IMG/VR virus record: IMGVR_UViG_3300023174_000039
Span: 124,001-188,000 of that record
Length of the DNA stretch: 64,000 nucleotides
Direction: 5' to 3' (one strand)
Shown: positions 19,853-63,224 of the stretch, piece by piece
How the letters are laid out: each line of letters opens with the position of its first letter
How positions within the stretch are numbered: position 1 is the stretch's first letter
Notes under the pieces: generated by a model
Told to the model about the DNA's origin: nothing
Seen by the model: only the letters and a program-made list of their open reading frames with translations
The model's database searches: none
Translations under genes and position numbers: made by a program

Positions 19853-19879
19853 ATATACCAGACTAGGAACATAATAACA

Positions 19880-22800
19880 ATGGCACAACCAACCTGGATC
19901 ACTCCCGCAGGCAGTTTAGGGATCATACCCGAAGGCGTTTTTTATCAGCAGACTTTGCTGGGATCAACTGATTCGTTGCCAAACACGCCAACTGTTACTG
20001 CCGCCAATGGAGTCACCAACAGATTTACCTGTACCAGTTTAAACGGAATATACCCGCGACTGAACGTGACATTTGCCGGCACAACATTTGGCGGTGTCGA
20101 CGAATACACTAGATATTTTGTACTAGAAGTATTTCCGTTGACCAACGAGTTTTCTATTGCACCCACTGAGTTTACTACAACTCCTACACCATTGACCACA
20201 GCAACAGGGTCAATGACTGCGGTGTTTACTCAACACATCTATTATTATTTGATTTCTGGATCACTTCCTCCGGGCATCCAGGTCAGCGACAACGGAACCA
20301 TTGTGGGTGTGCCGCAGGCCATTGCCAGTTTCCAAGGCGTTCCCCTGGAAGTCAGCCGCGATGTTGTGAGCAAATTTACTTTGCGTGCCTACACTGAAAA
20401 ATATGAAGCTGGGCAGTATGTGCGGGACCGCATTAGAGATAGAACATTTGAATTGACAGTGACCGGTAATGATCCCCCGGCCTGGATCACACCTGCCGGC
20501 GAAATTGGCACATATTATGATGGCGGTGAAGTCAATTTCCAGTTTGCTTATACTGATACTGATCCGGCTGACATTGTGGCTGTGAGCCTGGTAGCAGGTG
20601 AATTCCCGCCAGGAATATCTTTGGGTGCCAAAGGCCTGTTGTACGGATACATTGAACCAATTGTTCCTATTGATGATAACTCTGGTTATGATCTATCTCC
20701 ATCTGGCACACAACCCTATGACTTTGTGTCATCCTATGTGAGCAGAAACTATCAATTCACTCTAGAGATCACTGACGGCAAGTCCAGAGATCTACGAACA
20801 TTCACAATGTTTGTGTATGCTCGAAATGAGATGACTGCCGATACCACGCAGATCACTGCAGATAACACAGTTGTCACTGCTGACGAAACAACTATTCGAG
20901 CACCATTCTTGACCAACGCACTGCCTACCAACTTGGGCAGTGTTCGCAGTGACAACTACTATGTGCATCAGTTTATAGGCGATGATTATGACACTGCTAG
21001 TATTGCCTATGCAATCAATGTTAACCAAGGGTCCGGACTGCCACCATTACAAAACAGCAAAACAGACACTGGTACTACCAATGCTGGACTGGATCCCAAA
21101 ACAGGATTTTTGTATGGTTATATTCCTGACCAAGGTACCACACAGATTGAATACAGTTTCAACATCACTGTGTATCAAACTGAAAGTGTTGCTGTTCCTG
21201 TTTTGTGTACAGCTACCACAGCCGGTACAAATCGTATCACGTGCGCCAGCACTGCCAGCTTGGCTATCCCTAGTGAATGGTACGCTCCCGGGGACCCACC
21301 GTTGTATGTGCCTATCAAGCTGAGTGGTACTGGACTTGGAGGGTTGAGTACAGTGGGAGAAACACTGTATTATGTACTGTACGTTTACAGTGATACTGAA
21401 TTCTCTGTAACTGCCAGTGCCACATCAACAACCCTGGTGATGTTGACCACTTCTGCTGGCACAATGACAGCCAGTGTGGTTATTACCAGCCAACCGTATC
21501 CGTTTACCTTGACCATTGTGGGTGCCATTGACAGTGAGATCACTTGGTTAACTCCGGAACATCTTGGCACCTTGGTCAATGGCGAAACCAGCTTGTTGTA
21601 TATAGAAGCTGTGAACCGTGGTGGCAGAACCTTGCAATACCGCTTGGCCTCTGGCGAATACAACAGCTTGCCCCAGGGCCTGGAACTGTTGCCCACAGGA
21701 GAGATTGCAGGGCGTGTTACATTCAACACATTTGCTGTGGATCTGGGTGCCACAACTTTTGATAACAAAACCACAAACTGGGATAGCTCTTACACATTCA
21801 ATGTGAATGCTTATGCACCTGACACTCAACAAAAATTATACGATGTAGCCAGCATTGGCATTGTGGCCACAGGATCTGGCTACAGCAGTGCCAGCCCGCC
21901 AACCATTGTGTTCTCTACTCCAGTTGGTGCCAGTGCCGAAACAGCCATGGTAGGCAATGTTACCATTGGGTATACAGATGCAATCACATCAGTGAGACGT
22001 GTGGGTAATGTTGCCTATGTAACTGCCAACAACAAACTGGCACCAGGTGATGTAGCCAATGTCAATTGTTCAATCAACTCTTTTGACAATTCCACAGCCA
22101 CAGTGCTGGCCTCCAGTGCCACACAGTTTATCTATGCCAATTCTGGTCCAGATATTGCGTCAACCATTGCAACAGGTACTGTGAAATACGGTACAGGAAT
22201 CACCGCAGTTGAAGTAAGCAATGCAGGTGCAGGATACACAGGCCAGGCCACTATTACCATCACAGAAGGTTATGGCGGGGCAGGAGCCAATCTGCAGGCC
22301 ATAATGCAACAGACTGGCACACGCGATGTGGTGTCAGTGTTCAAGAAGTTTACCATAAAAGTCAACAGAGAATACAATGCACCGTATCAAAGTTTATATG
22401 TGCAGGCCATGCCGCCGGAAAACGATCGTGCCCTGGTGGCCAGCCTATTGAGCAATCAAAATATTTTCATACCCGATTATATCTATAGACCTACTGATCC
22501 AAATTTTGGACTCAGCACCCAGGTGGTATATCAACATGCATTTGGACTTGCTCCGGATGCCTTGGACATATACACTGAAAGTTTGTACCTAAATCACTAC
22601 TGGAAGAATCTCACACTGGGCGAAATCAAAACAGCCGTGGCCAGAGATGCCAACGACAACATTGTGTATGAAGTGGTTTACAGCCAGATTGTTGACAATC
22701 TAGTGAATGCCAGTGGCCAAAGTGTGGCCAAAATTGAAGCCACTGCATACCCCATTGTTGATCCTGCCGACGGTAGTAGTGTACTGAATGTGGTTTACCC

Positions 22801-48938: not shown

Positions 48939-49011
48939 ATATTTTCGTAATGGTTGCTTGTTGTTGATCAACACAGTATAATAACAATATAATTGGTAAA
49001 AAAGGAACTTG

Positions 49012-51273
49012 ATGCAGAACAATCCTGAAGTAGAACAAGTGGTTGAAACCGCTGTTAATTTGGCTAGAGAAAAACAGCACGAATACGTGCTGACCGAACA
49101 CCTGTTGCTGGGCATGTTACGACACATGCCATTTAGGCGAGTGGTTGAAAAGTTTGGTGCCGATGCTGACCTACTGGATATTGAATTAAATGTATACCTA
49201 GACAGTCAGGTCAACCTAGTTAGCAACGCCAAAGATGTCCAACCTCGCAAAACACAGGCGTTGGAACGTATCTTTAATCGTGCCAATGTGCAGGTGATGT
49301 TTACCGGTCGCAGAACCATGAATGTGATTGACATTTATCTGAGCATCATGGCCGAAACCAATAGTCATGCACATTACTTTTTGCTCAAGTACGGTATTCG
49401 CAAAGCAGAATTCATCGAGTTCTATCAAAAGAATCACCAGCCCGAGAGTGTGAAAATGAATGCCCAGCAGGCCACAGACATTCTGGAAGAGCATTGCACA
49501 AACATTTCAGCAATGGCAGCCAAGAATCAGTTAGAACCCTTGATTGGTCGCAGTCAAGAACTGGAGGACATGATCACTGTGTTGGCACGGCGCTTCAAGG
49601 CCAATGTGCTCATGGTAGGTGATCCTGGGGTGGGCAAAACTGCCATCATCGACGGACTTGCACAAGAGATACACAACAACTGTGTGCCCGAGTTCCTTAA
49701 AGGACACGAAGTATGGGGTCTTGAGATTGGGTCATTACTGGCAGGAAGCAAGTATCGCGGAGAGTTTGAAGAAAAGTTCAAGCAGGTTATTGCCGCACTA
49801 GAAGCCAAGAAGAACTGTATATTGTTTGTGGATGAAGCACACACCATGCGTGGCGCAGGATCATCGGGACAGAGCAACTTGGACTTTGCCAACATGCTGA
49901 AACCAGCAATTACCAAGGGCAACCTCAAAGTCATTGCATCAACCACTTGGGAAGAATACTACGAGAGTTTTGAAAAGGATCGTGCCTTGATGCGCAGATT
50001 CCACAGACTGTCAATTGATGAACCCAATGATGCAACCACAGAACAAATCCTCATTGGGCTGAGTCCACGACTAGAAAAGTTCCACAATGTCATGATTGAT
50101 ACAGAAGCCATGACAGCGGCTGTGGAACTGAGCGGACGTTACATTCATGACAAAAAGAATCCCGACAAATCAATTGACTTGTTGGATGGTGCTTGTGCTC
50201 GACAGCGTGTGCGGGATGCAGGACTGGTAACAGTTACCAAAGACATGATCATGGCGCAGGTCAGCAAGGTAGCAGGTGTGCCCATGGATCGCTTGCAGAA
50301 CGAGCGTAGCACAAACATTGTGGATCTTGAAAGCAATATCAAGCAGAAGCTCTACGGCCAAGATGCCGCTGTGGATTCAGTGCTAGAGCGTGTGTACATT
50401 AACTTTGCAGGCATTGGTGCAACAACTCGCCCTATGGCAAGTTTCCTGTTCTTGGGTCCAACAGGTACAGGCAAAACAGAACTGGCCAAACTGCTGAGTG
50501 AAAACTTGGACATGAAACTGCTCAAGTACGACATGAGTGAGTATCAAGAAAAGCACACAGTATCCAGCTTGATCGGTGCGCCGCCAGGTTATGTGGGCTT
50601 TGAGGATGGCAATGTAGGTGGCGGCAAGCTGATCAGTGATCTTACTAAAAACCCATTCTCGATTATCTTGTTTGATGAAATTGAAAAAGCACACCCTGAT
50701 GTTTCCAATATCCTGTTGCAGATGCTGGACGAAGGACACATCACAAGCTCTGCAGGCAAGCGTGTGGATGTCAAAAACACCATCATTATCCTGACTTCAA
50801 ATTTGGGTGCGCGAGACAACGAAAGCAATGCCATTGGTTTTGGATCACAGGAAAAGACCGGCAACGAAGACCGGGCAATGAAAGAGTTCTTCAAGCCTGA
50901 ACTGCGTAATCGTATTGATCAGATCTGTAGATTTAACAAGCTGGACCGGCTGGCCATCAAGAAGATTGTGATCAAGTTTGCAGATCAACTCAAAGCCAGT
51001 TTAGATGAAAAACACATTCGACTCACACTCAGTGAAGATGTCATAGACATGCTGGCCGACAAAGGCTACGATCCCAAGATGGGTGCTAGACCCTTGGCAC
51101 GCAAGATTGATGAATTGATCAAAGTACCTTTATCTAAGAAAATTCTATTTGATCGACTCGGCAACTGCGAAGTGTTTGTGACCATGCAAGGTGATTCAGT
51201 ACATTTTGAATCTGTTGCACACCTTGTGCCCGTGGTAGACAACGATGGCATTATCCGATTCCCAGATGTTTGA
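49012..51273 (+). CDS. clpA: ATP-dependent Clp protease ATP-binding subunit ClpA
   Basis: Clp N-domain; two AAA modules (GDPGVGKT, GPTGTGKT); LIGAPPGYVG; MGARPL. Confidence 0.92.
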   Translation: MQNNPEVEQVVETAVNLAREKQHEYVLTEHLLLGMLRHMPFRRVVEKFGADADLLDIELNVYLDSQVNLVSNAKDVQPRKTQALERIFNRANVQVMFTGRRTMNVIDIYLSIMAETNSHAHYFLLKYGIRKAEFIEFYQKNHQPESVKMNAQQATDILEEHCTNISAMAAKNQLEPLIGRSQELEDMITVLARRFKANVLMVGDPGVGKTAIIDGLAQEIHNNCVPEFLKGHEVWGLEIGSLLAGSKYRGEFEEKFKQVIAALEAKKNCILFVDEAHTMRGAGSSGQSNLDFANMLKPAITKGNLKVIASTTWEEYYESFEKDRALMRRFHRLSIDEPNDATTEQILIGLSPRLEKFHNVMIDTEAMTAAVELSGRYIHDKKNPDKSIDLLDGACARQRVRDAGLVTVTKDMIMAQVSKVAGVPMDRLQNERSTNIVDLESNIKQKLYGQDAAVDSVLERVYINFAGIGATTRPMASFLFLGPTGTGKTELAKLLSENLDMKLLKYDMSEYQEKHTVSSLIGAPPGYVGFEDGNVGGGKLISDLTKNPFSIILFDEIEKAHPDVSNILLQMLDEGHITSSAGKRVDVKNTIIILTSNLGARDNESNAIGFGSQEKTGNEDRAMKEFFKPELRNRIDQICRFNKLDRLAIKKIVIKFADQLKASLDEKHIRLTLSEDVIDMLADKGYDPKMGARPLARKIDELIKVPLSKKILFDRLGNCEVFVTMQGDSVHFESVAHLVPVVDNDGIIRFPDV

Positions 51274-52938: not shown

Positions 52939-54738
52939 ATGAAACAGCTAGTAATCATGCCCGGGGGATTCCACCCCTTTCATGCGGGACACGCCGCTCT
53001 TTATCAATCTGCCGTTGAAGCATTTCCCGGTGCTGATGTATATGTGGCTGCCACCAACGATACCAGCACACGCCCTTTTCCGTTTCCTGTCAAAGAAAAA
53101 CTAGCACAATTGGCCGGGGTTCCCAAAGGCCGATTCATGCAGGTTAAATCGCCTTTTCGAGCAGAAGAAATCACAGCACCTTACGATCCCAACAACACAC
53201 AGTTGATCTTTGTGCGTTCAGATAAAGACGCAGGATCACAACCTCGTCCAGGTGGCAACAAAAAAGACGGATCACCTGCATACCTACAACCATATGATGA
53301 TGCCAGTGATCTGCCCATGAGTCAACATGCTTACATGGCCTACTTGCCTACTGTGGAGTTCGGACCTGGCATGACATCAGCCACAGAGATTCGCAGTGCA
53401 TGGCCCCGGCTAAATGAAAAACGCAAAACAGCTCTGGTCATGAGCCTGTATCCCAAGGCACAGACTAATCCCAAGCTGGCAGCCACAGTGGTTAAACTGT
53501 TGGACACAGCTATGGGCGCAGAACTAAATGAGTTTGCGTCTGCAGGCATTGACGACGGTAATGATAGTGACGATGAGAAAACATATCTGTTACAGCTGGC
53601 AGAAGATCTCAGTGAAGCCATGTACGGTCCCAATAAAAACAAACAAGCAATAGAAAATATAATGGCCAAGATCCGTGCTGTGGGAGGCGATGTAAAGATA
53701 ACATGGAATCCTGACGGCACATTTAATGTGGCAATGTATCATCCGGTACACTTCAAGCAAGGCTATCTAATTAGACTGGTTGGCCGGGGCAATCAAGGCC
53801 TGGACGAAAATACAGCGCCAAACCCACGTGTGAATTTAACCCCTAACTTTCCCAACTACGCTACCTTAATTGGAGAGTTTGTTGGCATTAAAAAGAATCG
53901 TGCGCTGTTTCGTATCATTGCCGCAGAGCTCCGGCCAGGACAAGGTGAAACTGAAAAGATCTTTCGAGCCATGAGTACCAACACTCCCATTGGCATTGAG
54001 ATTGGCAAAGTAAAAAATCGTGCTGTAGTAGAAAATGTAGGCAAAGAATTTATATTGTATATCAATGGTAAACCTGCTGCCAAGTATGTGGACCAACAAC
54101 AGGCCATACTAGACATGGCCGCGGTAAGAAAGAAATATCCTGCCGCTAGACTAGAACTCAAACACGAAGTGTGTGACATGCAAACTGTGAAACAAATCAA
54201 CGAAGGCGGCAGCATACTAGAAGCACTCAAGCCGGATGCGTTTGCTGTCTTGCAAAAAGCCAAACAAAACATAAAACAAAATCGTCAGCAAGAGCAACAG
54301 GCCAAACAACAGATTGAACCGGAACGTCAGCAAGAAGTTGATCAATGGGCACAAGACTTCCGGGCCAACAGTGCAAAATTAGCAGGACGTCAGCTGAAAC
54401 AAAGATTTGCCGCGCCTCCACCGGCTCCAATCCCTGTGGCTAAACCGGGTGAGGGATATTACGCATTAAAAGATAGATTGGCACAGTTAGATATTGCCAA
54501 ACAAAAGTTTGAAGAATTTAACAAATTGATTGCGTCAATTAAAAAGAAATATCCTTTAGTGGCAGACACGCTAGATCAACTGGAAAACAGTTTGTTACAA
54601 GATGTCAAGGACGGTGCCGCAGATAATTACGCATCTCTACTGACTAAATTAAACAAGTACAAAAATGCGTTGACAACCAGGTTTCCTGGCATAGTCAAAG
54701 AAGACCCCGATTACATCGAAGAAGGTCGCAAAATTTAA
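52939..54738 (+). CDS. HxGH cytidylyl/adenylyltransferase-like domain fused to several modules
   Basis: PGGFHPFHAGH and SATEIR; linkers LNEFAS, QGLDE, VVE and INE. Confidence 0.75.
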   Translation: MKQLVIMPGGFHPFHAGHAALYQSAVEAFPGADVYVAATNDTSTRPFPFPVKEKLAQLAGVPKGRFMQVKSPFRAEEITAPYDPNNTQLIFVRSDKDAGSQPRPGGNKKDGSPAYLQPYDDASDLPMSQHAYMAYLPTVEFGPGMTSATEIRSAWPRLNEKRKTALVMSLYPKAQTNPKLAATVVKLLDTAMGAELNEFASAGIDDGNDSDDEKTYLLQLAEDLSEAMYGPNKNKQAIENIMAKIRAVGGDVKITWNPDGTFNVAMYHPVHFKQGYLIRLVGRGNQGLDENTAPNPRVNLTPNFPNYATLIGEFVGIKKNRALFRIIAAELRPGQGETEKIFRAMSTNTPIGIEIGKVKNRAVVENVGKEFILYINGKPAAKYVDQQQAILDMAAVRKKYPAARLELKHEVCDMQTVKQINEGGSILEALKPDAFAVLQKAKQNIKQNRQQEQQAKQQIEPERQQEVDQWAQDFRANSAKLAGRQLKQRFAAPPPAPIPVAKPGEGYYALKDRLAQLDIAKQKFEEFNKLIASIKKKYPLVADTLDQLENSLLQDVKDGAADNYASLLTKLNKYKNALTTRFPGIVKEDPDYIEEGRKI

Positions 54739-55677: not shown

Positions 55678-55694
55678 CGGTAAATATAGTTCGT

Positions 55695-58600
55695 ATGAAC
55701 ATCAACGAACTAGATTCCTATAACCTTGCCGATGCTGTTAAGTTTAATGAAGAACTTAACCCACGCATCTGGCAAGGTTCTCGCATGCGCCCAGAAGTGC
55801 GCCGAAAATTACTGGCCATTGCTCGAGATTTTAAACAAAGTCTAGGACTCAGTGACCTAGAAGTCAAAGACATCACACTCAGCGGAAGCAACGCTGGTTA
55901 CACATATACCCCGCACTCGGATATTGACCTACACCTTGTGGTAGATGTTCCACAAGCAGAAACTGACGAAGTGTATCGTGAGTTGTTCAATGCCAAAAAG
56001 TACCAATATAATGATGAGCACAACTTGGCCATTGGCGGCTATCCTGTTGAGTTGTATGTTCAGCCGGCCAATCAAACACATCACTCACAAGGAATCTATT
56101 CAGTATTAAACAACGACTGGACTGCTATTCCTCGCAAGCGAGAAAGCACAGTGAATGACGGTGCTGTAAAAAGCAAGTACGAACTCATGAAGCATCGTAT
56201 TAACTCTGCCATCAACAGCGGCAACATCAAACAGTTGACCAAAACTGCCGCACGTATCAAACAAATGCGGCAAGCAGGTCTAGACAAAAACGGTGAACTG
56301 GGTCCTGAGAATCTGGCCTACAAAATGTTGCGTACACAAGGGCTGATTGAAAAGTTGTACACTGCTCGCACCGCGGCCAAAGATCGGCTGCTGAGTCTAC
56401 AAGAGCAACCTGTGGCAGAACACGTAACGTACGGTTTTGCAGAAGATGCAACCATATCTCCTTACGGTGTTAGTCCCACGACACAGATGTTTCTAAATGA
56501 AACAGGTGACAGTGAACAAACTGTACATGATTTTATTTCTCATACCGCTGAACAACTGGGCATTGAAAACATGCCGCATATTGAATTGCACACAGACCCT
56601 GAATGGTCAGAACGTGAACACAGCTTTGGTCGTTACACTCCTGAAACACATACCTTGGAAGTGAACTTGGCCAATCGTCACATCATGGACATCCTGCGTA
56701 CCACAGCACACGAACTGGTACATTGCAGACAACATGAACTATCTCCACTGCCCAACGAAGCAGGAGAAACTGGCAGTCGTTGGGAAAACGAAGCACATGC
56801 CAAAGCTGGGGTGATCATGCGTGACTATGCTGATGCCAATCCTGAAAAGTTTGGCGAACATGCCCTGGCAGAAGCATCAGGATATATTCCCACTAGGGCG
56901 CAGGTTCGAGATCCACGTTTCAGTACTGCACTTACTGTGGATGTGCATCCAGGGCAAACAGGCAAGGAAGCCAACAAGATGGCTTTGCAAACAGATGCAC
57001 AAGGTCGTCCTGCCTTGTTGACGAAGGGGCTGGCAAATCAACTGCACGAAGAGTTTGCACAGTTTGATGAGTCAACTGCGCTATTTGAAATCAAAATGAC
57101 CGGCAAGAACCTGCGAGCCGAAGCTGCCAAAACAGGTGCCATTGCCGGCATGGAATTTGAAATGATTGTGCCCAACATGGAGGGCGACCCTGACGATGAT
57201 CAGGAAATGGAGCCTGATTGGGAATATGATGAAAGTGTTATTAGTATTGATGATGCATGTAACTTCTTTGAAAACGGTGAGGGCAACACCAGTGGTGACA
57301 TTAGACGCCTGCGTGAACGCATGCAAAACTATTATTACGATTGGTTAGATGAGCAGTTTGACAGTCGCTGGGACGGCGATGAGTTAGAGTTTATTTACAA
57401 CTACATTAAAGAAAATGCCAGCGCAGAAGAAATTGCAGAAATATTGGGCACAGAACCCAACGAAGATGGTGAGTATCCTGACCCAGGTAAACAAGATTAT
57501 CTTGATGCCGCAAACAAAATTAGCGAACAAGGCTACGACAACCAATGGTATAGTCAAGCACGTGAAGACGCACAAGAAGATTATAACAGAAATGCTGACC
57601 AAGAACGAGAATGGCTAGCAGACCAAGACATCAACACCATGAAGGATGTGATGGACACGTTTGGCAATGTCAATTGGCCTTACTACTATAATTCCAATGT
57701 CGGTGGTGATAGAAGTATAGATGATGTGGCTAATGATTTCCAAGACGCAATAGGCCGTGATGTTCAAGCTAGCACTAGATATCACTCAGGGAGTGTGGAT
57801 AGACCCAGCCCAAGTTCACATCATTATGTGGTCGAGCCCGACGGCAGTTTAGATGGCGACAACTACGGGGACCGAGGCCTGGAGTTTGTGAGCCCACCAT
57901 TGCCCATTGATGTAATCCTTAATGATCTAAGCAAAGTCAAACGCTGGGCAGACAGCTATGGTTGCTACACTAACGATTCAACTGGATTGCACATCAATAT
58001 TTCAGTGCCTGAATACAACAGAGACAAGCTGGACTTTGTAAAGTTGGCTATCCTGATGGGCGACGAACATGTGTCCGACAGCTTTGGACGATTAGGTGCA
58101 TACTACGCAAAAAGTGCTATGGCTGCAATTCGCGACAATGTTCGCAGTCGCCCTGAGGCCGTGACAGATGCCCTGGAAAAAATGCGAACACACATGAATA
58201 CAGCGGCATCAAAAGCTATTCATGCCGGTGTGACTCAGAAATTTACCAGTATCAACGTCAAAGACGGCCACATTGAATTTCGCTCACCTGGCGGTGATTG
58301 GTTGGGCGAGAACTTTGACAAGATTGAAAACACCCTGTTGCGTTTCACAGTGGCCATGAGTGCTGCCTTAAACCCAGAAATGTATCGCGAAGAATACCTG
58401 AAGAAACTGTACAAGTTATTGACTCCGGAAGGACAGAAAGACGAGTACGGAGACATGATCGAAGAGTTCTCCAAGTACATGGTATCACTGCAAGGCAGTG
58501 GTGCAGAAGCGAGTGGCAAGTTGAGCAAAGAAACACAGCAGGCCATCAAGGACTTTAGAACAGCGGCCAGCAAAGAACTAAAACAAAAAAATCTGGCCAA

Positions 58601-60572
58601 CAAGCTGAAAAAGGGCAACACTGCTGGTCAAAAGTACTGGTGGAAAGTTTCTAATCCTGGAAACAGTAATGCTGGTATAGAAGTTGTGGCCACAACCAAA
58701 GAGGAAGCAATTGAAAAAGCCACGGGTGAAGATGGGTATCCAAGCTGGGCTAACTATCTAAGTTCCCTGGTTGCAAAGCCGTTGAGTCCTTATTATGAAA
58801 AATCCAAACCTTCCCAACAAACTGCCAGATATGAAATCTACAACAAACAAACTGGTAACTCGGTAGAGACTGCTGATGGCATTACCAACGATGCAGACGC
58901 ACTAGTTCGCCTGAATGATTATATTGAACACGGTCCGCATGCACTACAACGCGGGCAAGCCTCACGTATGTTTGGTATTCGCACCACCAATGGGGTTGAG
59001 ATTGTGGACATAGACATACCCATGGCCCAAGGTCGTGCTGCCACAAGTCCAACCGGAAAATGGAAAATAACAGACGGATTGGGTCGTTACCTATATGTGT
59101 TCCGTCCTGCAGAGAACACCCGATCAGCAGCCAACGAGTTAGCCGCATTATGGGCAAGAGAAAACAACTTTGATGGCAACTATCAAGTTGAGCCAGTAGA
59201 AGATACTGCGCAAACTGGCACACAGGATCAACAACAAGGCGGCTTGATTGACGTTGTGCCAGGATCTACAAATGATCTAGCACGTCAGCGAGCAACACCT
59301 GGTGCATTTACAGGTGCATGGAAGGTTCTAGATGCCGACGGCAACGAGCTGTATAGATTCTCAGGCGTAGGCAACAATCAAAGTGATGCTAACCGTGTAG
59401 CAGTACAATGGATGCAGAACAATGGTTATGATCACGGCACAGAAATGTCTGTAGTGCCTGTCATGAGCGAAAGCATTGCGGAAGGTGCAGATAAAAAATA
59501 CACAATTAAAAAATCTTACACCATGTCCAAGGCTGGTGTAGAAAAATCTGTATGGCACATTATGGACGGTGACTTTGTGGTGGACGTTACTGACTTGAGA
59601 CGCGATGCCAAGTACTACGCTGACAAGTGGAATGCTGCCGAGAAGGAATCATCAGACGCATCTCAAAATCTACACAAGCAAGGCATGGCAGAAGGTCTGA
59701 ATGAATTTGCACCTAGCAGCCAAGGTGGAGGTAATTCAGGACGCTGGTACACTGATGACGAGCTTGCAGATATCATTGGTGATGATTGGTTTGAAGACTT
59801 TGATGTCAGCCACGATGGGTTTAATATTGATACACATGGCGAAAAAGCCAAGCAAAATCTAGTGGGTTATGCCAACTCCTGGTTCGATGATCGAGGTTAT
59901 AATGTCAACGTAATGGGCGTGGAACACAATGATGTTGACCACGATTTAAAATGGTACATTGTTGGTAGTTTCCACAATCCCCGCTTTGCCAACGAAGGTG
60001 TGACGGAAGCCAGTTTATCAACCATGCGAGACTTTTTTGCCGGTGATGAAAAGGCACGTGATCCATACGAAATTACCAAACAACGGTTACACTTTAGTAA
60101 AGATCCCAAAACTGCTGCAACCAATAGAAAAGAATTTAGAAGCAAAGAAGAGTATGAACAATGGGCAAAACAAAATAAAATAGTAAATGCACCTAAGGTT
60201 AACGAGGCTCCAGAATTTTTCTCTATGCCATTGCGCATGAGCGAATATCGTGGTAAACATCATCCTGCAACCGAAGAGCCGTACGATGCCAAGTTCAAGT
60301 TCTCGGGTGATTTAAAAGATCGTGTACACAGTCTATTAGATGCAGGAACCAAGCCCAAGCTGTTACAAGTCAATCCGCGTCATTTGTTGGCCACACAAGA
60401 CTGGCTGAGCAATCAAGGCGGCGGCAAGCCACCATTTGCCACAATGAAACAACATCCTGTGGTGCTACAAAAAAACAACAAGTTGTACATTCTCGACGGC
60501 CATCATAGATCAGCAGATGCGCTCAACTCTGGCTCACCAATTGAAGTATACCTATTCCAGGATGAATTATGA
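55695..60572 (+). CDS. 1625-aa polyvalent protein: Pol-beta nucleotidyltransferase, HExxH metallopeptidase, putative amidoligase, repeats and ParB-like domain
   Basis: GSNAGY...SDIDLH; AHELVH; GMEFE...EPDGSL...LEFVSPP...STGLHINIS...IEFRSPGG; ILDGHHR. Confidence 0.8.
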   Translation: MNINELDSYNLADAVKFNEELNPRIWQGSRMRPEVRRKLLAIARDFKQSLGLSDLEVKDITLSGSNAGYTYTPHSDIDLHLVVDVPQAETDEVYRELFNAKKYQYNDEHNLAIGGYPVELYVQPANQTHHSQGIYSVLNNDWTAIPRKRESTVNDGAVKSKYELMKHRINSAINSGNIKQLTKTAARIKQMRQAGLDKNGELGPENLAYKMLRTQGLIEKLYTARTAAKDRLLSLQEQPVAEHVTYGFAEDATISPYGVSPTTQMFLNETGDSEQTVHDFISHTAEQLGIENMPHIELHTDPEWSEREHSFGRYTPETHTLEVNLANRHIMDILRTTAHELVHCRQHELSPLPNEAGETGSRWENEAHAKAGVIMRDYADANPEKFGEHALAEASGYIPTRAQVRDPRFSTALTVDVHPGQTGKEANKMALQTDAQGRPALLTKGLANQLHEEFAQFDESTALFEIKMTGKNLRAEAAKTGAIAGMEFEMIVPNMEGDPDDDQEMEPDWEYDESVISIDDACNFFENGEGNTSGDIRRLRERMQNYYYDWLDEQFDSRWDGDELEFIYNYIKENASAEEIAEILGTEPNEDGEYPDPGKQDYLDAANKISEQGYDNQWYSQAREDAQEDYNRNADQEREWLADQDINTMKDVMDTFGNVNWPYYYNSNVGGDRSIDDVANDFQDAIGRDVQASTRYHSGSVDRPSPSSHHYVVEPDGSLDGDNYGDRGLEFVSPPLPIDVILNDLSKVKRWADSYGCYTNDSTGLHINISVPEYNRDKLDFVKLAILMGDEHVSDSFGRLGAYYAKSAMAAIRDNVRSRPEAVTDALEKMRTHMNTAASKAIHAGVTQKFTSINVKDGHIEFRSPGGDWLGENFDKIENTLLRFTVAMSAALNPEMYREEYLKKLYKLLTPEGQKDEYGDMIEEFSKYMVSLQGSGAEASGKLSKETQQAIKDFRTAASKELKQKNLANKLKKGNTAGQKYWWKVSNPGNSNAGIEVVATTKEEAIEKATGEDGYPSWANYLSSLVAKPLSPYYEKSKPSQQTARYEIYNKQTGNSVETADGITNDADALVRLNDYIEHGPHALQRGQASRMFGIRTTNGVEIVDIDIPMAQGRAATSPTGKWKITDGLGRYLYVFRPAENTRSAANELAALWARENNFDGNYQVEPVEDTAQTGTQDQQQGGLIDVVPGSTNDLARQRATPGAFTGAWKVLDADGNELYRFSGVGNNQSDANRVAVQWMQNNGYDHGTEMSVVPVMSESIAEGADKKYTIKKSYTMSKAGVEKSVWHIMDGDFVVDVTDLRRDAKYYADKWNAAEKESSDASQNLHKQGMAEGLNEFAPSSQGGGNSGRWYTDDELADIIGDDWFEDFDVSHDGFNIDTHGEKAKQNLVGYANSWFDDRGYNVNVMGVEHNDVDHDLKWYIVGSFHNPRFANEGVTEASLSTMRDFFAGDEKARDPYEITKQRLHFSKDPKTAATNRKEFRSKEEYEQWAKQNKIVNAPKVNEAPEFFSMPLRMSEYRGKHHPATEEPYDAKFKFSGDLKDRVHSLLDAGTKPKLLQVNPRHLLATQDWLSNQGGGKPPFATMKQHPVVLQKNNKLYILDGHHRSADALNSGSPIEVYLFQDEL

Positions 60573-61576
60573 GAGCACATGAATTTTTATCCGAAGGTCA
60601 AGAAGAATTTAACCAAGAAATAATGCAACACGGTTTTGAGTTCAGTCAGAAAATTGCCGGTGTTACATATAAAGTAATAAACGATCTTGGTGTACTCTTG
60701 GTCACAGCCTTAGATCCAGCAGGAGAACAAATCGGACATGCAAGTTTTTGGAAACATCAAACTCGTTCAGGACTAGAAAGTCTAAGTACCGAAGTTGACG
60801 ACAAATGGCAAGGCAAAGGCATTGCCGCAAACATGTATGCCGTTGTACGTATGCTGGGCGCAAACATAAATCCATCATTATTCCAAAGCAAGCAAGGAAA
60901 AAACATGTGGAAGAAGTGGCAACAACAAGGCGACGTTGCACATCTAAAACGCATGAATGCAAAAAACAAAGACCAAGATATAGCAGAAACAATAAACTCC
61001 GCCATACTCAATAAGAGATTCCGACACAAACAAGTAATTGGCAATTATACTTACAGAGCATCAGTTGAAATGTTTATGGGTGAGCCGTTATTGTCAATCA
61101 AAGCCTATGACGGAGATAGGGAAATAGGTCATATTCTGTTTGAAATAATTGTAAGATCTCCAGGAGGGAAGAGAGATCCATCCGCGGATTACTTAGAAAG
61201 CGGCGGCACTGAGGTTGATCCAGCATATAGAAACAAAGGTGTGGCATCCACAATGTATGCGTATGCCAAAATGTTAGGCAATGATATTCGACCCAGTTAT
61301 AATCAAACAAGTCAAGGCCAAGCAATGTGGGCGGCCTGGAACAAGACAGGTGATGCAAAGCATTTGATCGGTACTGCCGCGGAATCCACTATGGCGGAAA
61401 ACTTTGCTGATGGCAAAGTAAAAGGCAAAAGCCGCCCTGGGCGTGTGAAACGGTCAGGTGCCAGTTGTGATGGCAGTGTGACAGATCTACGTGCTCGTGC
61501 AAAGAATGCATCAGGTGAAAAGGCCAAAATGTATCACTGGTGTGCCAACATGAAGTCTGGTCGCAAAAAAAGTTAA
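60569..61576 (+). CDS. tandem GNAT acetyltransferase domains plus a basic C-terminal module
   Basis: EVDDKWQGKGIA and EVDPAYRNKGVA acetyl-CoA motifs; MRAHEFLSE start. Confidence 0.8.
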   Translation: MRAHEFLSEGQEEFNQEIMQHGFEFSQKIAGVTYKVINDLGVLLVTALDPAGEQIGHASFWKHQTRSGLESLSTEVDDKWQGKGIAANMYAVVRMLGANINPSLFQSKQGKNMWKKWQQQGDVAHLKRMNAKNKDQDIAETINSAILNKRFRHKQVIGNYTYRASVEMFMGEPLLSIKAYDGDREIGHILFEIIVRSPGGKRDPSADYLESGGTEVDPAYRNKGVASTMYAYAKMLGNDIRPSYNQTSQGQAMWAAWNKTGDAKHLIGTAAESTMAENFADGKVKGKSRPGRVKRSGASCDGSVTDLRARAKNASGEKAKMYHWCANMKSGRKKS

Positions 61577-62277
61577 TTGCGCAGTTTTGCAAGACCCACA
61601 AGTCTAAATACATTTAACCACATCCAACCTATATCAAATTCAAACCAGCGGCGACTGAGACAAGGATTGCCGGGTTCAAGGTGATGATTATTATGAAGAC
61701 ATTCACCGCCAATAATAATACCCCAAGGCATAATGTTCCTACTATTATCTTTGGTTTTGCCATTTCTATATCCCCACCAATGACCTAGGCCGTTGATAAC
61801 ACCTGCGGCCCAGAATGGAATCCATATCATTTGGATGCCCCATACTAACAGTCCCCAAGCACCAAACAACACAAGATTGATCAATAACATTAACACAATG
61901 CCCAAGCGACTGTGTTTGGTGTATATGTTGCGCTCAATCCAGTCATCAGGTGTGCCAGCACCATACTGTGCTATCATTTGATCATCACGGCTGGCCAAAT
62001 GATAAAGCCCTGCGCCCTTGAACAACACACGCCAAATACCATACACATGTGGGCTGTGCGGATCTTGTGTTTCTTCTGTGAATCTATGATGTTTGCGATG
62101 TATAGCCACCCATTGACGGGTGACCATGCCAGTGGTTAACCATAACCAGGCTCTCATAAAATGTTCCAGTATAGGATGAAATACAATGCTTCTGTGTGCT
62201 TGTCCACGATGTAAAAACAACGTGACACATATTATAGTGATGTGTGTAACTGTTAGGGTGTAAATTAGTTCAGTCAT
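61573..62277 (-). CDS. delta-9-type fatty acid desaturase
   Basis: His boxes HRGQAH, HRKHH and HNNHH; TM segments. Confidence 0.92.
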   Translation of the reverse strand: MTELIYTLTVTHITIICVTLFLHRGQAHRSIVFHPILEHFMRAWLWLTTGMVTRQWVAIHRKHHRFTEETQDPHSPHVYGIWRVLFKGAGLYHLASRDDQMIAQYGAGTPDDWIERNIYTKHSRLGIVLMLLINLVLFGAWGLLVWGIQMIWIPFWAAGVINGLGHWWGYRNGKTKDNSRNIMPWGIIIGGECLHNNHHLEPGNPCLSRRWFEFDIGWMWLNVFRLVGLAKLRN

Positions 62278-62325: not shown

Positions 62326-62616
62326 ATGGGATTACAAAGCGTTCAATTTGAATACGAAGTACATTGCGACTGGACCGGCACACCACCTGTTTATCGCTTG
62401 TACATCAATGACGAACTGTTTACTGAACGCACATACATCTGGAATAACAAATATCTTGAAGAAGCAGTGTCAATCGAAGCACTGCCTGGGGACTATGTTG
62501 TTCGTTATGAATTACACGGTAACGGAACGCTGACTGCAAAAAACCCCAAAGTCACCATTGGCACAGCAGAGTTTATAGACAATAACACATTAAGGATTCC
62601 GCATGAGAGCTCATGA
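62326..62616 (+). CDS. hypothetical late protein
   Basis: PVYRLYINDELFTERTYIW. Confidence 0.7.
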   Translation: MGLQSVQFEYEVHCDWTGTPPVYRLYINDELFTERTYIWNNKYLEEAVSIEALPGDYVVRYELHGNGTLTAKNPKVTIGTAEFIDNNTLRIPHESS

Positions 62617-62821
62617 GATTATGGAAAATGCCAGTGCAGGCGCCACTTGTGCAGGGTCAATTGCTCCTGTAGAAAGCACCATGGGCATGGTATCAAGAAA
62701 CGGCGGATCAATGCTAACAGGTAAATATGTAACAGGTTCAGATCCCACACCGAACACACCTAAAGAATACAAAAGGAACAAGAATGTTAGCGGACGCTTT
62801 AAAAATTCTCCTGGCAACTGA
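62603..62821 (+). CDS. small protein with a capsid-targeting-like N-terminus
   Basis: MRAHEIMENASAGAT. Confidence 0.65.
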   Translation: MRAHEIMENASAGATCAGSIAPVESTMGMVSRNGGSMLTGKYVTGSDPTPNTPKEYKRNKNVSGRFKNSPGN

Positions 62822-63224
62822 AGAAGCTTTTGCTCTAAAAGCCAAACAGTTTCACTGGAACGTAGAAGGCCCAGATTTTGGCCAGCTACATGCTTTCTTT
62901 GACGCGATCCACGACGATGTGTATGGTGCTACTGACCCTACCGCTGAATACATTCGTGCCATGGGCGATTATGCTCCAGGGTCATTTGAACGATTTATAG
63001 AACTAACAAAAATACAGGGACAAACAAAGATCCCACGTGCTAGACTTATGTTAGAAGAACTCTTGGCCAACAATGGTCAAATGCTGGATCTTCTTAACGA
63101 AACCTTCCAAGTAGCAACCAATGAAAATCAGCAAGGTATTGCCAACTTCATTGCCGAACGAATTGATGCCCACCAGAAACATGGATGGATGTTGAGAAGT
63201 TATTTGAAAGAGCAACGAGCATGA
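62784..63224 (+). CDS. dps: Dps/ferritin-like DNA protection protein
   Basis: FHWNVEGPDFGQLH...AEYIR...HQKHGWML. Confidence 0.92.
   Translation: MLADALKILLATEEAFALKAKQFHWNVEGPDFGQLHAFFDAIHDDVYGATDPTAEYIRAMGDYAPGSFERFIELTKIQGQTKIPRARLMLEELLANNGQMLDLLNETFQVATNENQQGIANFIAERIDAHQKHGWMLRSYLKEQRA

What the first reader, a model, noticed from the sequence alone, without database searches (positions are those of the whole stretch)
55695..60572. 1625-aa polyvalent protein combining nucleotidyltransferase, zincin, amidoligase and ParB-like modules
Seen: a Pol-beta NTase (about 55695-56400), an HELVH peptidase (56709), an amidoligase-type domain interrupted by a long acidic insert (about 57090-58430), two related W-K-(I/V)-x-D...AN repeats (about 59050-59460), an EFAP module and a C-terminal DGHHR domain. 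Most are bounded by Glu linkers (LQE, FLNE, LAE, LFE, SIAE, GMAE, GVTE, VNE). Established: such domains occur in phage and plasmid polyvalent proteins linked to host takeover. Inference: a protein-modification toolkit (nucleotidylation, peptide ligation, removal) released as separate enzymes.
Basis: partly seen in the sequence, partly recalled or inferred. Interest (0 to 1): 0.7.

Follow-up and report, generated by a model that had tools for sequence, protein, structure and literature searches.

The report
Modular effector polyprotein of a T4-like jumbo phage
A 1625-residue gene of a freshwater T4-like giant phage strings together several enzymes and small cassettes, joined by linkers that look like cut sites for the phage's own head-maturation protease, so it is probably cut into pieces inside the capsid and injected into the host with the DNA.

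Summary
Window 55695-60572 (+) is one uninterrupted 1625-aa ORF in a 331,654-bp lake-water phage genome that encodes a T4-type capsid protein and a gp21-type prohead protease.

- **Enzyme domains:** sequence, fold or both support a Pol-beta nucleotidyltransferase, a mini-zincin (HELVH plus E364), a glutamine-synthetase-like amidoligase with a folded acidic insert, two homologous repeats and a ParB/sulfiredoxin-like DGHHR end. Catalytic residues are invariant in relatives.
- **Architecture:** residues 1-1258 form a conserved core with more than 1,200 metagenomic relatives. About half of the 119 closest end exactly at 1258. Residues 1259-1625 are four cassettes that recur on their own in other proteins.
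- **Glu linkers:** a plain [LIVM]-x-E count is at chance level in this protein. The specific linker word G-[VMLI]-[ATS]-E-[GAS] is about 70-fold enriched in proteins that share these cassettes. Stand-alone copies of the same modules begin MRAxEF[IL]xE, close to the T4 capsid-targeting sequence MKTYQEFIAE. Natural gene splits fall at residues 236/237, 465/466 and 1258/1259.
- **Virion link:** a cultured homologue of the amidoligase (Atu_ph07 gp196) was detected in virions.

Best reading: a capsid-packaged polyprotein cut by the prohead protease into injected enzymes. This is inferred, not shown. It is a new variant of known polyvalent and internal-protein systems.

The parts
55680..55686 (+). 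GTAAATA element 8 nt upstream of the ATG; candidate T4-type late promoter core
   Evidence: TAAATA is the most enriched hexamer in the 45 nt upstream of genes in this genome: 60 of 318 genes against about 3.2 expected. It also precedes the portal-like and scaffold-like genes. Its role as a promoter is inferred.
55695..60572 (+). Whole ORF, 1625 aa (P0001)
   Evidence: no internal stop.
55695..56405 (+). Module 1 (aa 1-237): Pol-beta-type nucleotidyltransferase plus a helical domain, ending in the conserved L-S-L-x-E237
   Evidence: PHROG 36119 at 6.8e-40 and NTP_transf_2 at 20.8 bits against a cut-off of 21. G64-S65, D76, D78 and E119 are at least 90% conserved. Fold hits are CdnE, ANT(9) and 2rff. 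It is a stand-alone protein of about 235 aa in Maribacter, Synechococcus and Lak phages. In L066 it is a separate ORF ending at the equivalent of residue 236.
56406..56507 (+). Linker 1 (aa 238-271), flanked by LQE237 and LNE269
   Evidence: pLDDT is about 30. LQE is conserved in 99% and LNE in 82% of aligned relatives.
56508..56852 (+). Module 2 (aa 272-386): minimal zincin metallopeptidase with H339-E340-x-x-H343 and E364
   Evidence: H339, E340, H343, Q346 and E364 are invariant in 74 sequences. Fold matches: AQ_1354/YbeY Z 8.9, SPRTN 8.5, Wss1 8.4; jannalysin and abylysin reach Foldseek probability 1.0. A stand-alone 122-aa 'IrrE N-terminal-like' phage protein is 39% identical with TM 0.82.
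56853..57095 (+). Linker 2 (aa 387-467): nearly invariant but predicted unstructured, ending in the invariant L463-F-E465
   Evidence: pLDDT is 29-44. Invariant residues are listed. LFE is 100% conserved. Its function is unknown.
57096..58430 (+). Module 3 (aa 468-912): glutamine-synthetase-like amidoligase (Amidoligase_2), with an acidic helical insert at aa 495-672 (nt 57177-57710)
   Evidence: PF12224 scores 28.6 bits, above its cut-off of 22. Glutamine synthetase Z 10.2, PafA/Dop Z 6.7-6.9, YbdK Z 6.7. E487, E489, E714, D716, S718, E730, H766, N768, E861 and R863 are invariant. The insert is 28% Asp+Glu with pLDDT 85-92.
58431..58619 (+). Lys-rich helical connector (aa 913-975)
   Evidence: Low to medium pLDDT and 22% Lys+Arg.
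58620..59468 (+). Four small beta-beta-alpha-beta domains: D1 (aa 976-1035), D2 (1043-1103), D3 (1113-1171) and D4 (1188-1258). This is the end of the conserved core.
   Evidence: pLDDT is about 90 for each. D3 and D4 are homologous (hhalign 98.6%). About half of the 119 closest relatives end at query residue 1257-1259. 40 of about 46 ORF ends in 80 loci map to 1258-1260. No [LIVM]-x-E lies between the four domains.
59469..59483 (+). Junction S-E-S-I-A-E (aa 1259-1263) between the core and the variable tail
   Evidence: Among the relatives that extend past the core, MSE1259 is conserved in 87% and IAE1263 in 69%. Stand-alone T1-bearing proteins start MSESIAEG.
59484..59693 (+). Cassette T1 (aa 1264-1333), ending G-M-A-E1333
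   Evidence: It recurs on its own in 15 representative proteins at different positions. The model is weak, pLDDT 46-68.
59706..60008 (+). Cassette T2 (aa 1338-1438), the 'EFAP' module, preceded by L-N-E1337 and ending G-V-T-E1437
   Evidence: 103 representative proteins carry it at varied positions. At its N-boundary P1 is Glu in 91 of 92 cases and P3 is L/V/I/M in 92 of 92. pLDDT is 72-89; fold matches are weak (POTRA-like, Z 5.0).
60009..60206 (+). Cassette T3 (aa 1439-1504), ASLSTMRDFFAG..., ending V-N-E1504
   Evidence: It occurs in 15 representative proteins, always starting just after x-[VI]-D/x-E. It is mostly low-confidence in the model.
60207..60569 (+). Cassette T4 (aa 1505-1625): ParB/sulfiredoxin-like domain with invariant D-G-H-H-R (aa 1601-1605)
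   Evidence: pLDDT is 89-98. The top fold hits are sulfiredoxin, ParB, Noc, KorB and SbnI (Foldseek probability up to 0.97, VIA Z 5.2). ParBc_2 matches below its cut-off in 32 of 33 members. It also occurs as stand-alone proteins of 115-250 aa.
60569..61576 (+). Adjacent gene (ATGA overlap): leader MRAHEFLSE, two GNAT-like repeats and a basic C-terminal ENFADGK module
   Evidence: The same GNAT and ENFADGK modules are fused to P0001 relatives (for example P0074, P0092, P0120).
62603..62821 (+). 72-aa ORF with the leader MRAHEIME followed by NASAG
   Evidence: E followed by NASAG also occurs at the maturation-like site of the capsid protein, YLKE then NASAG.

Best explanation
**What it is.** P0001 is a polyvalent effector polyprotein of an uncultured freshwater T4-like jumbo phage.

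**Shown:**
- It has a conserved core: a Pol-beta nucleotidyltransferase, a mini-zincin, a glutamine-synthetase-like amidoligase with an acidic helical insert, and four small domains.
- It has a variable C-terminal array of four cassettes, the last one ParB/sulfiredoxin-like.
- The modules are separated by flexible linkers.

**Inferred mechanism:**
1. The gene is expressed late, from a T4-type late-promoter-like element.
2. The protein is built into the prohead core.
3. The phage's gp21-type prohead protease cuts it after Glu in [LIVM]-x-E linker sites (LSLxE237, LNE269, LFE465, MSE/IAE1259-1263, GMAE1333, LNE1337, GVTE1437, VNE1504).
4. The predicted products are the nucleotidyltransferase, the zincin, the amidoligase with its four small domains (aa 466-1258) and four small cassettes.
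5. These stay in the capsid and enter the host with the DNA, as T4 internal proteins and Alt do. There they would modify host proteins, nucleic acids or metabolites, or counter host defences.

The targets and chemistry of each enzyme are unknown.
For: 1. **T4-like context.** The genome has a Peptidase_S77 protease and a Gp23 capsid gene. All five large related genomes tested (5 of 5) also carry the protease.
2. **Independent modules.**
   - Each domain has high per-domain pLDDT and is separated from the next by low-pLDDT linkers.
   - Stand-alone homologues exist.
   - Catalytic residues are invariant.
3. **Linkers.**
   - Conserved [LIVM]-x-E sites sit at both ends of the linkers.
   - The word G[VMLI][ATS]E[GAS] occurs 217 times in 148 cassette-sharing proteins against 3.1 in shuffles. 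The Asp version occurs 4 times against 4.8.
   - At the T2 N-boundary P1 is Glu in 91 of 92 cases and P3 is hydrophobic in 92 of 92.
4. **Leaders.**
   - 39 of 143 cassette-sharing proteins and five ORFs of this genome start M[RK]AxEF[IL]xE or a close variant. One of the five is the gene directly downstream.
   - This matches the core of the T4 capsid-targeting sequence MKTYQEFIAE (PMC8442874). In that sequence residues 4 and 7 target the protein to the capsid, residues 8 and 10 direct processing, and Asp at position 10 blocks processing (PMC9026906).
   - The same module junction is preceded by a leader in some proteins and by a linker in others.
   - The strict leader occurs 10 times in 4 of 5 related genomes, with synonymous codon variation, and 0 times in the reversed control.
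5. **Natural gene splits at the proposed sites.**
   - In 11 of 80 loci the amidoligase with D1-D4 is its own ORF (equivalent to aa 466-1258) with a leader of 7 to 13 residues that ends L-x-E directly before INMSP (13 in most).
   - ORF ends pile up at 1258-1260.
   - A stand-alone nucleotidyltransferase ends at the equivalent of residue 236.
6. **Protease specificity.** gp21-family proteases cut after Glu following a short motif (PMC5694885). This phage's capsid protein has YLKE followed by NASAG at the position that I align, from memory of the T4 gp23 sequence, with its maturation region.
7. **Late-promoter-like element.** TAAATA lies directly upstream, as it does for the portal-like and scaffold-like genes.
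8. **Virion detection of a homologue.**
   - Atu_ph07 gp196 is homologous to the amidoligase (BLASTP 1e-27) and has the leader ...KLTE followed by LKM.
   - Its gene lies two genes upstream of the portal gene.
   - It was found in purified virions with 14 unique peptides and 30.2% coverage (PMC6102473 Table S5).
Against: - There are no proteomic or biochemical data for this phage, so no cleavage or packaging has been observed.
- P0001's own N-terminus (MNINELDS, invariant in the family) is not the MRAxEF[IL]xE leader. How the core would reach the prohead is open.
- The raw number of [LIVM]-x-E words in P0001 equals chance. LAE393 is conserved in only 36% of relatives.
- The cassette-sharing proteins were found by homology to a query that included the linkers. 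Part of the motif enrichment is therefore ascertainment.
- Linker DNA is itself strongly conserved: 85 G[VM]AEG sites give only 12 distinct 15-mers. A role in recombination cannot be excluded.
- The order nucleotidyltransferase, zincin, amidoligase is fixed in over a thousand relatives. That hints the three enzymes work together, which fits an unprocessed enzyme as well.
- PEG-purified virion proteomes such as that of Atu_ph07 (131 proteins) can contain passengers.
Confidence: 0.55

Rival explanations
1. The protein is an unprocessed cytoplasmic multi-enzyme. The nucleotidyltransferase, zincin and amidoligase act together on one substrate during infection. They might activate a carboxylate or hydroxyl by nucleotidylation, ligate an amine or peptide, and trim the product. 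The target could be a modified metabolite, a cell-wall component, a nucleic acid or a protein tag. The tail cassettes would be accessory binding or regulatory domains, and the protein would not be packaged.
For: The collinear order nucleotidyltransferase, zincin, amidoligase, D1-D4 is kept in nearly all of the 119 closest relatives and in most of 80 viral loci. Such conservation is typical of enzymes that cooperate. P0001 lacks the canonical leader at its N-terminus. The gene lies about 135 kb from the head gene cluster.
Against: - The three enzymes do occur as separate genes in relatives and in other phages.
- Split-off genes gain capsid-targeting-like leaders that end at the same L-x-E site.
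- The Atu_ph07 amidoligase homologue is virion-associated and encoded next to the portal gene.
- The linkers carry a motif conserved beyond anything folding requires.
Confidence: 0.2
2. The protein is a packaged or injected polyprotein, but it is cut by its own zincin domain (in cis or trans), before packaging or after injection. This is what was proposed for metallopeptidase-containing polyvalent proteins such as P1 DdrB.
For: A zincin with intact HExxH and a third Glu ligand is a fixed part of the core. Iyer et al. 2017 propose autoproteolytic release for such proteins (PMC5512222). The fold resembles the minigluzincin zymogens and the SprT/Wss1 peptidases. The nearly invariant unstructured segment right after the zincin (aa 394-462) could be an autoinhibitory or substrate segment.
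Against: - Most cassette-sharing proteins with the same linkers and leaders have no zincin of their own.
- The invariant determinant is Glu at P1 with a hydrophobic P3, which is the known signature of gp21-family prohead proteases (PMC5694885, PMC9026906). Zincins usually read the P1' side, which here varies (G, A, S, F, I).
- The leader equals the T4 CTS core, which is processed by gp21.
Confidence: 0.12
3. The recurrent leader and linker sequences are mainly DNA-level homology patches that promote recombination and shuffling of cassettes between genes. They are not protease or targeting signals, and the protein works as one chain.
For: - Cassettes are clearly shuffled among hundreds of architectures.
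- G[VM]AEG linkers in 80 loci use only 12 distinct 15-mers, and 39 of 85 are identical.
- Conserved CTS-coding DNA flanking variable internal-protein genes is a known feature of T-even phages. I state this from my own knowledge; I did not check it here.
Against: - Leaders show free synonymous variation (CGA/AGA, GCC/GCT/GCA, GAA/GAG, TTT/TTC, several Ile/Leu codons) while the peptide is kept.
- Asp never replaces Glu.
- The motif matches a functional peptide signal known from T4.
- Recombination and proteolysis are not mutually exclusive.
Confidence: 0.08

Closest known systems
Polyvalent proteins of phages and conjugative elements (Iyer, Burroughs, Anand, de Souza, Aravind 2017, PMC5512222); examples are P1 DdrB/DarB and the N4 virion RNA polymerase
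   Same: A single polypeptide combines several unrelated catalytic domains, including a zincin-like metallopeptidase, a Pol-beta nucleotidyltransferase and a ParB-like domain. It is phage-encoded. It is predicted to travel with the DNA and act early, and proteolytic release of its domains has been proposed.
   Different: - That paper does not mention an amidoligase among polyvalent-protein domains (0 occurrences).
- This family has a fixed core plus a variable cassette tail.
- Its linkers and leaders point to the T4-type prohead protease and capsid-targeting route, not to MuF, portal or T4SS coupling.
- Whether the zincin belongs to the MPTase clades defined there was not tested.
T4 internal proteins IPI, IPII, IPIII and Alt (capsid-targeting sequence MKTYQEFIAE, cut by gp21, injected with the DNA)
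   Same: The phage is T4-like and has a gp21-type protease. Stand-alone versions of the cassettes, and the neighbouring gene, begin MRAxEF[IL]xE. They share E-F-[IL]-x-E with the T4 CTS, including the residues shown to matter for targeting (Phe) and processing (Ile, Glu). The cargo is diverse and fast-evolving.
   Different: - Here many cargos are strung into one chain, with CTS-like cut sites used as internal linkers.
- P0001 itself starts with a different, family-specific N-terminus.
- The cargos are enzymes of 100-800 aa rather than small basic proteins.
- Nothing has been shown experimentally.
Inner-body and ejection proteins of phiKZ, 201phi2-1 and SPN3US, processed by gp175/gp245 at (S/A/G)-x-E or A-x-E
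   Same: These are giant phages with gp21 homologues that cut many head-internal proteins after Glu. Some are cut at several sites, and the mature fragments are ejected into the host (PMC5694885, PMC9026906).
   Different: This is a different phage lineage: it has a T4-type Gp23 capsid protein about 65% identical to those of PA5oct and Phosso. P3 is hydrophobic (L/V/M/I) rather than A/S/G. Leaders are short and T4-like rather than propeptides of more than 100 aa. The cassettes are shuffled in a beads-on-a-string arrangement.
Agrobacterium phage Atu_ph07 gp196 (AUZ94978.1) and Ralstonia phage RsoM2USA gp26
   Same: These are stand-alone amidoligases with the same acidic insert and the same start...L-[ST]-E followed by L-K-M. 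gp196 is encoded next to the portal gene and was detected in virions.
   Different: Identity is only about 29% and covers only the amidoligase. There is no fused nucleotidyltransferase, zincin, D1-D4 or cassettes. Both are annotated as hypothetical proteins.

Membership tests
Polyvalent proteins (Iyer et al. 2017) | Two to 15 functionally diverse domains, several of them catalytic, in one polypeptide of a phage or conjugative element | tested here: met
   Four enzyme-type domains plus at least seven further modules in one 1625-aa ORF of a 331-kb phage genome.
Polyvalent proteins (Iyer et al. 2017) | Contains hallmark domains of the class (zincin-like MPTase, Pol-beta NTase, ParB-like, ART, GNAT and others) | tested here: met
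   The zincin, NTase and ParB/Srx-like domains are supported. Relatives swap in ART, GNAT, deaminase and chitinase domains. Membership of the zincin in their specific MPTase clades was not tested.
Polyvalent proteins (Iyer et al. 2017) | Delivered into the recipient cell together with the DNA | not testable with these tools
   Only indirect evidence exists: virion detection of the Atu_ph07 gp196 homologue, and the leaders and linkers.
T4-type CTS-targeted head-internal proteins | The genome encodes a gp21-family prohead protease and a T4-type capsid protein | tested here: met
   Peptidase_S77 at 81 bits and Gp23 at 324.6 bits, both over their cut-offs.
T4-type CTS-targeted head-internal proteins | An N-terminal leader of about 10 residues of the type xxxx-E-F-I-x-E at the protein's own N-terminus | tested here: not met
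   P0001 starts MNINELDSYNL, which is invariant in the family. The leader is present on the adjacent gene, on four other ORFs of the genome and on 39 cassette-sharing proteins, but not on P0001 itself.
T4-type CTS-targeted head-internal proteins | Cleavage after Glu in a hydrophobic-x-Glu motif by the prohead protease | not testable with these tools
   The motifs are present, conserved and located in linkers. Cleavage itself has not been observed. The protease-linker complex prediction gave no answer.
Amidoligase_2 (PF12224) / glutamine-synthetase-like carboxylate-amine ligases | Profile match above the curated cut-off, a GS-like fold and conserved metal/ATP-binding Glu, His and Arg residues | tested here: met
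   28.6 bits against a cut-off of 22. GS Z 10.2. E487, E489, E714, E730, H766, E861 and R863 are invariant.
Pol-beta superfamily nucleotidyltransferases | An hG[GS] motif, a DxD/E motif and a third carboxylate on the core sheet | tested here: met
   S63-G64-S65, D76-I-D78 and E119 are at least 90% conserved. The Pfam score is just under the cut-off (20.8 against 21). Fold hits are CD-NTase, ANT and 2rff.
Zincin metallopeptidases (gluzincin type) | HExxH plus a downstream Glu ligand on a zincin fold | tested here: met
   H339, E340, H343 and E364 are invariant. Z is 7.6-8.9 to YbeY, SPRTN, Wss1, jannalysin and abylysin. Peptidase activity is not tested.
ParB/sulfiredoxin superfamily | An alpha/beta ParB/Srx fold with the conserved Arg of the DGxHR-type motif | tested here: inconclusive
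   DGHHR is invariant in 33 sequences. The best fold hits are all ParB/Srx members but are weak (Z 5.2, Foldseek E about 0.1, probability up to 0.97). ParBc_2 matches below its cut-off in 32 of 33 members. A profile search of PDB sequences found nothing.

The most novel reading that the evidence does not exclude
A widespread lineage of freshwater T4-like jumbo phages has turned the T4 capsid-targeting and gp21-cleavage signal into a general 'plug' for building injected effectors. Dozens of enzyme and inhibitor cassettes would be shuffled between genes, and each cassette is preceded either by the leader (MRAxEF[IL]xE) or by the same signal used as an internal linker. One gene such as P0001 would then load a whole, strain-specific toolkit into the capsid, and the prohead protease would unpack it there. 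This would be a combinatorial, polyprotein-based system of injected internal proteins that has not been described.
Probability: 0.4. Interest if true: 0.8.

Novelty: new variant of a known kind. Interest (0 to 1): 0.68.

Why it matters
If the processing model is right, this family shows how giant phages deliver a customisable set of enzymes with their DNA: one polyprotein, one protease and a short portable signal.

- It would extend the T4 internal-protein paradigm from three small proteins to a large shuffled cassette library.
- It would name more than a thousand metagenomic proteins as candidate injected effectors.
- It would give a simple sequence rule (leader or linker ending in hydrophobic-x-Glu) for finding capsid cargo in uncultured T4-like phages.
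- It would supply natural, portable signals for loading foreign proteins into phage heads.
- It would place an amidoligase among virion-delivered enzymes. The surveys of polyvalent proteins that I read do not mention amidoligases.

Tried and rejected
- **Nucleotide search:** a search against 50,697 cultured phage records found no match.
- **Protein search of cultured phages:** the whole protein found only the N-terminal nucleotidyltransferase. Residues 466-1258 found only distant amidoligases.
- **NCBIfam:** no family matched.
- **PDB sequence searches:** the whole protein and the ParB-like profile gave nothing usable.
- **ESM Atlas look-up of the EFAP cassette:** no usable hit.
- **Protease-linker complex prediction (prohead protease with the linker at aa 1318-1347):** no answer, score 0.00. 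This is not evidence either way.
- **One alignment for the whole tail:** MAFFT stacks unrelated cassettes on top of each other. The second structure job therefore used deep rows only for the core end and the ParB-like cassette, so T1 and T3 are poorly modelled.
- **Fold matches of D1, D2 and T2** (AcrIE2, AcrIF9, T7 Gp2, POTRA): Z is 5 or less and too weak to interpret.
- **Atu_ph07 gp195**, a nucleotidyltransferase next to gp196: not significantly similar to the P0001 nucleotidyltransferase (E 0.49).
- **Exact TATAAATA:** not enriched in the window. The shorter core TAAATA is the enriched element.
- **Literature search for the leader strings:** no relevant paper.
- **Plain [LIVM]-x-E count as a signal:** rejected, because in this protein it is at chance level.


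Full report
**1. The observation**

- Window 55695-60572 (+) is a single 1625-aa ORF from ATG to stop.
- The window is bases 124001-188000 of a 331,654-bp IMG/VR virus record estimated to be 95% complete.
- Near-identical sequence occurs in lake-water and freshwater metagenomes from independent studies.

**2. Genome context**

- The genome encodes a T4-type major capsid protein (Pfam Gp23, 324.6 bits) and a gp21-type prohead protease (Peptidase_S77, 81 bits) at 319-322 kb.
- The capsid protein is about 65% identical to those of the jumbo phages Sinorhizobium Phosso and Pseudomonas PA5oct.
- Neighbours of the ORF:
  - a ClpB-like ATPase;
  - a 599-aa protein with an HxGH nucleotidyltransferase head;
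  - a GNAT-like gene that overlaps the stop codon;
  - a fatty-acid desaturase;
  - a Dps/ferritin.

**3. Domains of the core (aa 1-1258)**

An AlphaFold2 model of residues 1-960, built on 74 relatives, gives three confident bodies separated by two low-confidence stretches at aa 238-271 and 387-467.

- **aa 1-237, Pol-beta nucleotidyltransferase plus a helical domain.**
  - PHROG 36119 matches at 6.8e-40 and NTP_transf_2 scores 20.8 bits against a cut-off of 21.
  - The GS, DxD and third-carboxylate residues are at least 90% conserved.
  - Fold hits are CD-NTases, ANT(9) and 2rff.
  - It is a stand-alone protein in Maribacter, Synechococcus and Lak phages.
- **aa 272-386, minimal zincin.**
  - H339, E340, H343 and E364 are invariant.
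  - Z is 7.6-8.9 to YbeY, SPRTN, Wss1 and the minigluzincins.
  - A 122-aa stand-alone phage relative is 39% identical.
- **aa 468-912, glutamine-synthetase-like amidoligase.**
  - PF12224 scores 28.6 bits, above its cut-off of 22.
  - Glutamine synthetase gives Z 10.2 and PafA/Dop Z 6.7-6.9.
  - All expected Glu, His and Arg residues are invariant.
  - The insert at aa 495-672 is 28% Asp+Glu but is modelled as a confident helical subdomain.
- **aa 976-1258, four small beta-beta-alpha-beta domains.** The second model (aa 955-1625) shows D1-D4.

Neither is met.

**4. Core plus cassettes**

- More than 1,276 metagenomic proteins match at E of 0.001 or better. 292 IMG/VR contigs encode relatives.
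- Among the 119 best relatives, residues 1-1258 are covered by nearly all. Coverage collapses after residue 1258, and about half of the proteins end exactly at 1257-1259.
- Others append chitinase, deaminase, ART, GNAT or ParB domains.
- An exhaustive search with residues 1259-1625 found 294 representative proteins. It resolves the tail into four cassettes that occur independently and at different positions:
  - T1, about aa 1264-1333;
  - T2, the 'EFAP' module, aa 1338-1438;
  - T3, aa 1439-1504;
  - T4, aa 1505-1625.
- T4 has an invariant DGHHR motif, and Pfam ParBc_2 matches below its cut-off in 32 of 33 members.
- T4's best structural matches are sulfiredoxin, ParB, Noc and KorB, but they are weak. 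I call it ParB/Srx-like, with membership inconclusive.

**5. The Glu linkers**

- Counting [LIVM]-x-E in P0001 gives 25, against 24.6 in shuffles.
- Three other measurements are significant:
  - **Placement.** 14 of the 25 sites lie in or at the edge of low-confidence segments, where about 7 are expected (P about 0.003).
  - **Conservation.** LQE237 is kept in 99% of relatives, LFE465 in 100%, LNE269 in 82% and MSE1259 in 87%. They are islands of conservation at the linker ends.
  - **Recurrence.** Across 148 cassette-sharing proteins the word G[VMLI][ATS]E[GAS] occurs 217 times against 3.1 expected. The Asp version occurs 4 times against 4.8.
- At the N-boundary of T2 the preceding residue is Glu in 91 of 92 cases, and P3 is L/V/I/M in 92 of 92.
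- Part of the enrichment is ascertainment, because the query contained linkers.

**6. Leaders**

- Stand-alone proteins that carry these cassettes often start M[RK]AxEF[IL]xE: 39 of the 143 that start with Met.
- The module then begins at the same junction that is preceded by a linker in fused proteins. For example, MRAKEFILKE is followed by FAPG, and internally ...GSLNE is followed by FAPG.
- Five ORFs in this genome have such leaders. One is the GNAT-like gene directly downstream (MRAHEFLSE). Another is a 72-aa ORF 2 kb further on.
- The T4 capsid-targeting sequence is MKTYQEFIAE (PMC8442874). In IPIII, residues 4 and 7 matter for targeting and residues 8 and 10 for processing, and Asp at position 10 blocks processing (PMC9026906). 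The E-F-[IL]-x-E core is shared.
- A strict back-translated leader pattern hits 10 times in four of five related genomes and never in the reversed control. The codons vary synonymously.

**7. Natural gene splits**

- In 11 of 80 viral loci the amidoligase with D1-D4 is its own gene.
  - It corresponds to P0001 residues 466-1258.
  - It starts with a leader of 7 to 13 residues, 13 in most: MKYLELKEQLLNE then INMSP, or, with a longer N-terminal stretch, MRATDLLINEDQDLFE then INMSP.
  - It ends ...VVPIMS.
- ORF ends cluster at coordinates 1258-1260 (40 cases).
- One locus has a separate nucleotidyltransferase that ends at the equivalent of residue 236.
- These breakpoints coincide with the conserved L-x-E sites.

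**8. Timing and virion evidence**

- TAAATA is the most enriched hexamer in the 45 nt upstream of genes: 60 of 318 genes against about 3.2 expected.
- It lies 8 nt before the P0001 start codon and also precedes the portal-like and scaffold-like genes.
- It resembles the T4 late promoter core TATAAATA. That comparison rests on my own knowledge.
- All five large related genomes tested carry Peptidase_S77.
- Evidence from a cultured relative, Agrobacterium phage Atu_ph07:
  - gp196 is a 500-aa amidoligase homologue with an acidic insert in the corresponding place (BLASTP 1e-27).
  - It has the same start...KLTE followed by LKM.
  - Its gene lies two genes before the portal gene.
  - It was identified in purified virions with 14 unique peptides and 30.2% coverage (PMC6102473 Table S5).

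**9. Mechanism**

The best-supported reading is as follows.

1. The gene is expressed late.
2. [quoted passage not shown]
3. The gp21-type protease cuts it after Glu at the linker sites.
4. The pieces are retained in the capsid.
5. The pieces are injected with the DNA.

Predicted products are the nucleotidyltransferase (to residue 237), the zincin, the amidoligase with D1-D4 (466-1258) and the four cassettes.

- **Shown:** domain identities, modularity, motif conservation, leaders, splits, and virion presence of one homologue.
- **Inferred:** packaging, cleavage, the agent of cleavage, injection, and all targets.

Open points:
- P0001's own N-terminus is not a canonical leader.
- The segment at aa 394-462 is almost invariant yet predicted unstructured.
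- Linker DNA is itself conserved.

The rivals, scored in the report sections, are an unprocessed cytoplasmic multi-enzyme, cutting by the internal zincin, and linkers acting as recombination patches.

**10. Comparison and novelty**

- It fits the polyvalent-protein class (PMC5512222), and it would work like T4 internal proteins and Alt and like the phiKZ/SPN3US ejection proteins (PMC5694885).
- It differs in three ways:
  - its core includes an amidoligase;
  - its tail is built from shuffled cassettes;
  - it uses a CTS-like signal both as a leader and as an internal linker.
- I found no paper describing this.
- I rate it a new variant of a known kind.

Noticed in passing
window 55680-55686; also G000 316159, 318234 and 57 other gene starts: TAAATA (as NTAAATA) sits in the 45 nt upstream of 60 of 318 crude genes, against about 3.2 expected. 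It is often only 0-8 nt from the start codon, which suggests a T4-like late promoter core with very short or absent 5' leaders.
   Followed up: partly
window 60569-61576 (+): This gene overlaps the P0001 stop codon (ATGA). It has the leader MRAHEFLSE, two GNAT-like repeats and a basic, Cys-containing C-terminal module (ENFADGK...). That module also ends many P0001 relatives and many unrelated cassette proteins.
   Followed up: partly
window 62603-62821 (+) and G000 320867-322063: A 72-aa ORF starts MRAHEIME followed by NASAG. The capsid protein has YLKE followed by NASAG at the place that I align, from memory of the T4 gp23 sequence, with its maturation region. The residues after the Glu are identical in the two.
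   Followed up: no
window 52939-54738 (+): A 599-aa protein has an HxGH cytidylyl/NMN-adenylyltransferase-like N-terminus followed by an ELNE-FASAG junction. It is another modular protein of the same style. L071 has an 865-aa relative with QGVAEG-NLNE-FAPG and T3 cassettes.
   Followed up: partly
window 56874-57080 (P0001 aa 394-462): This segment is almost invariant across relatives (ASGYIPT, DPRF, PGQTGKEANK, TD.QG.P.LL) but is modelled as unstructured (pLDDT 29-44). It is a conserved linear motif of unknown role, directly after the zincin.
   Followed up: no
window 49009-51273 (+), 61573-62277 (-), 62784-63224 (+): The phage encodes a two-ring ClpB-like AAA+ ATPase, a fatty-acid desaturase and a Dps/ferritin-like protein. 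These are auxiliary genes flanking the effector cluster.
   Followed up: no
G000 19734-20117, 20114-20500 and 61530-61889 (outside the window): Three further small ORFs (119-128 aa) start MRANEFIVE, MRAREFLTE and MRFREFITE. They are candidate capsid-targeted internal proteins.
   Followed up: no
G000 323028-331087 (outside the window): Downstream of the capsid gene there are three tandem pairs of paralogous genes. One member of each pair is about 680-696 aa and begins MPLSIGPGWSIGPGW. The other is about 307-314 aa, Gly-rich, and begins MGFTIGPGWAITGAW.
   Followed up: no
L004-L083 (80 related viral loci): G[VM]AEG linkers use only 12 distinct 15-nt sequences across 85 sites, and 39 are identical. 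The linkers are therefore conserved at the DNA level too, which may help cassette shuffling by recombination.
   Followed up: partly
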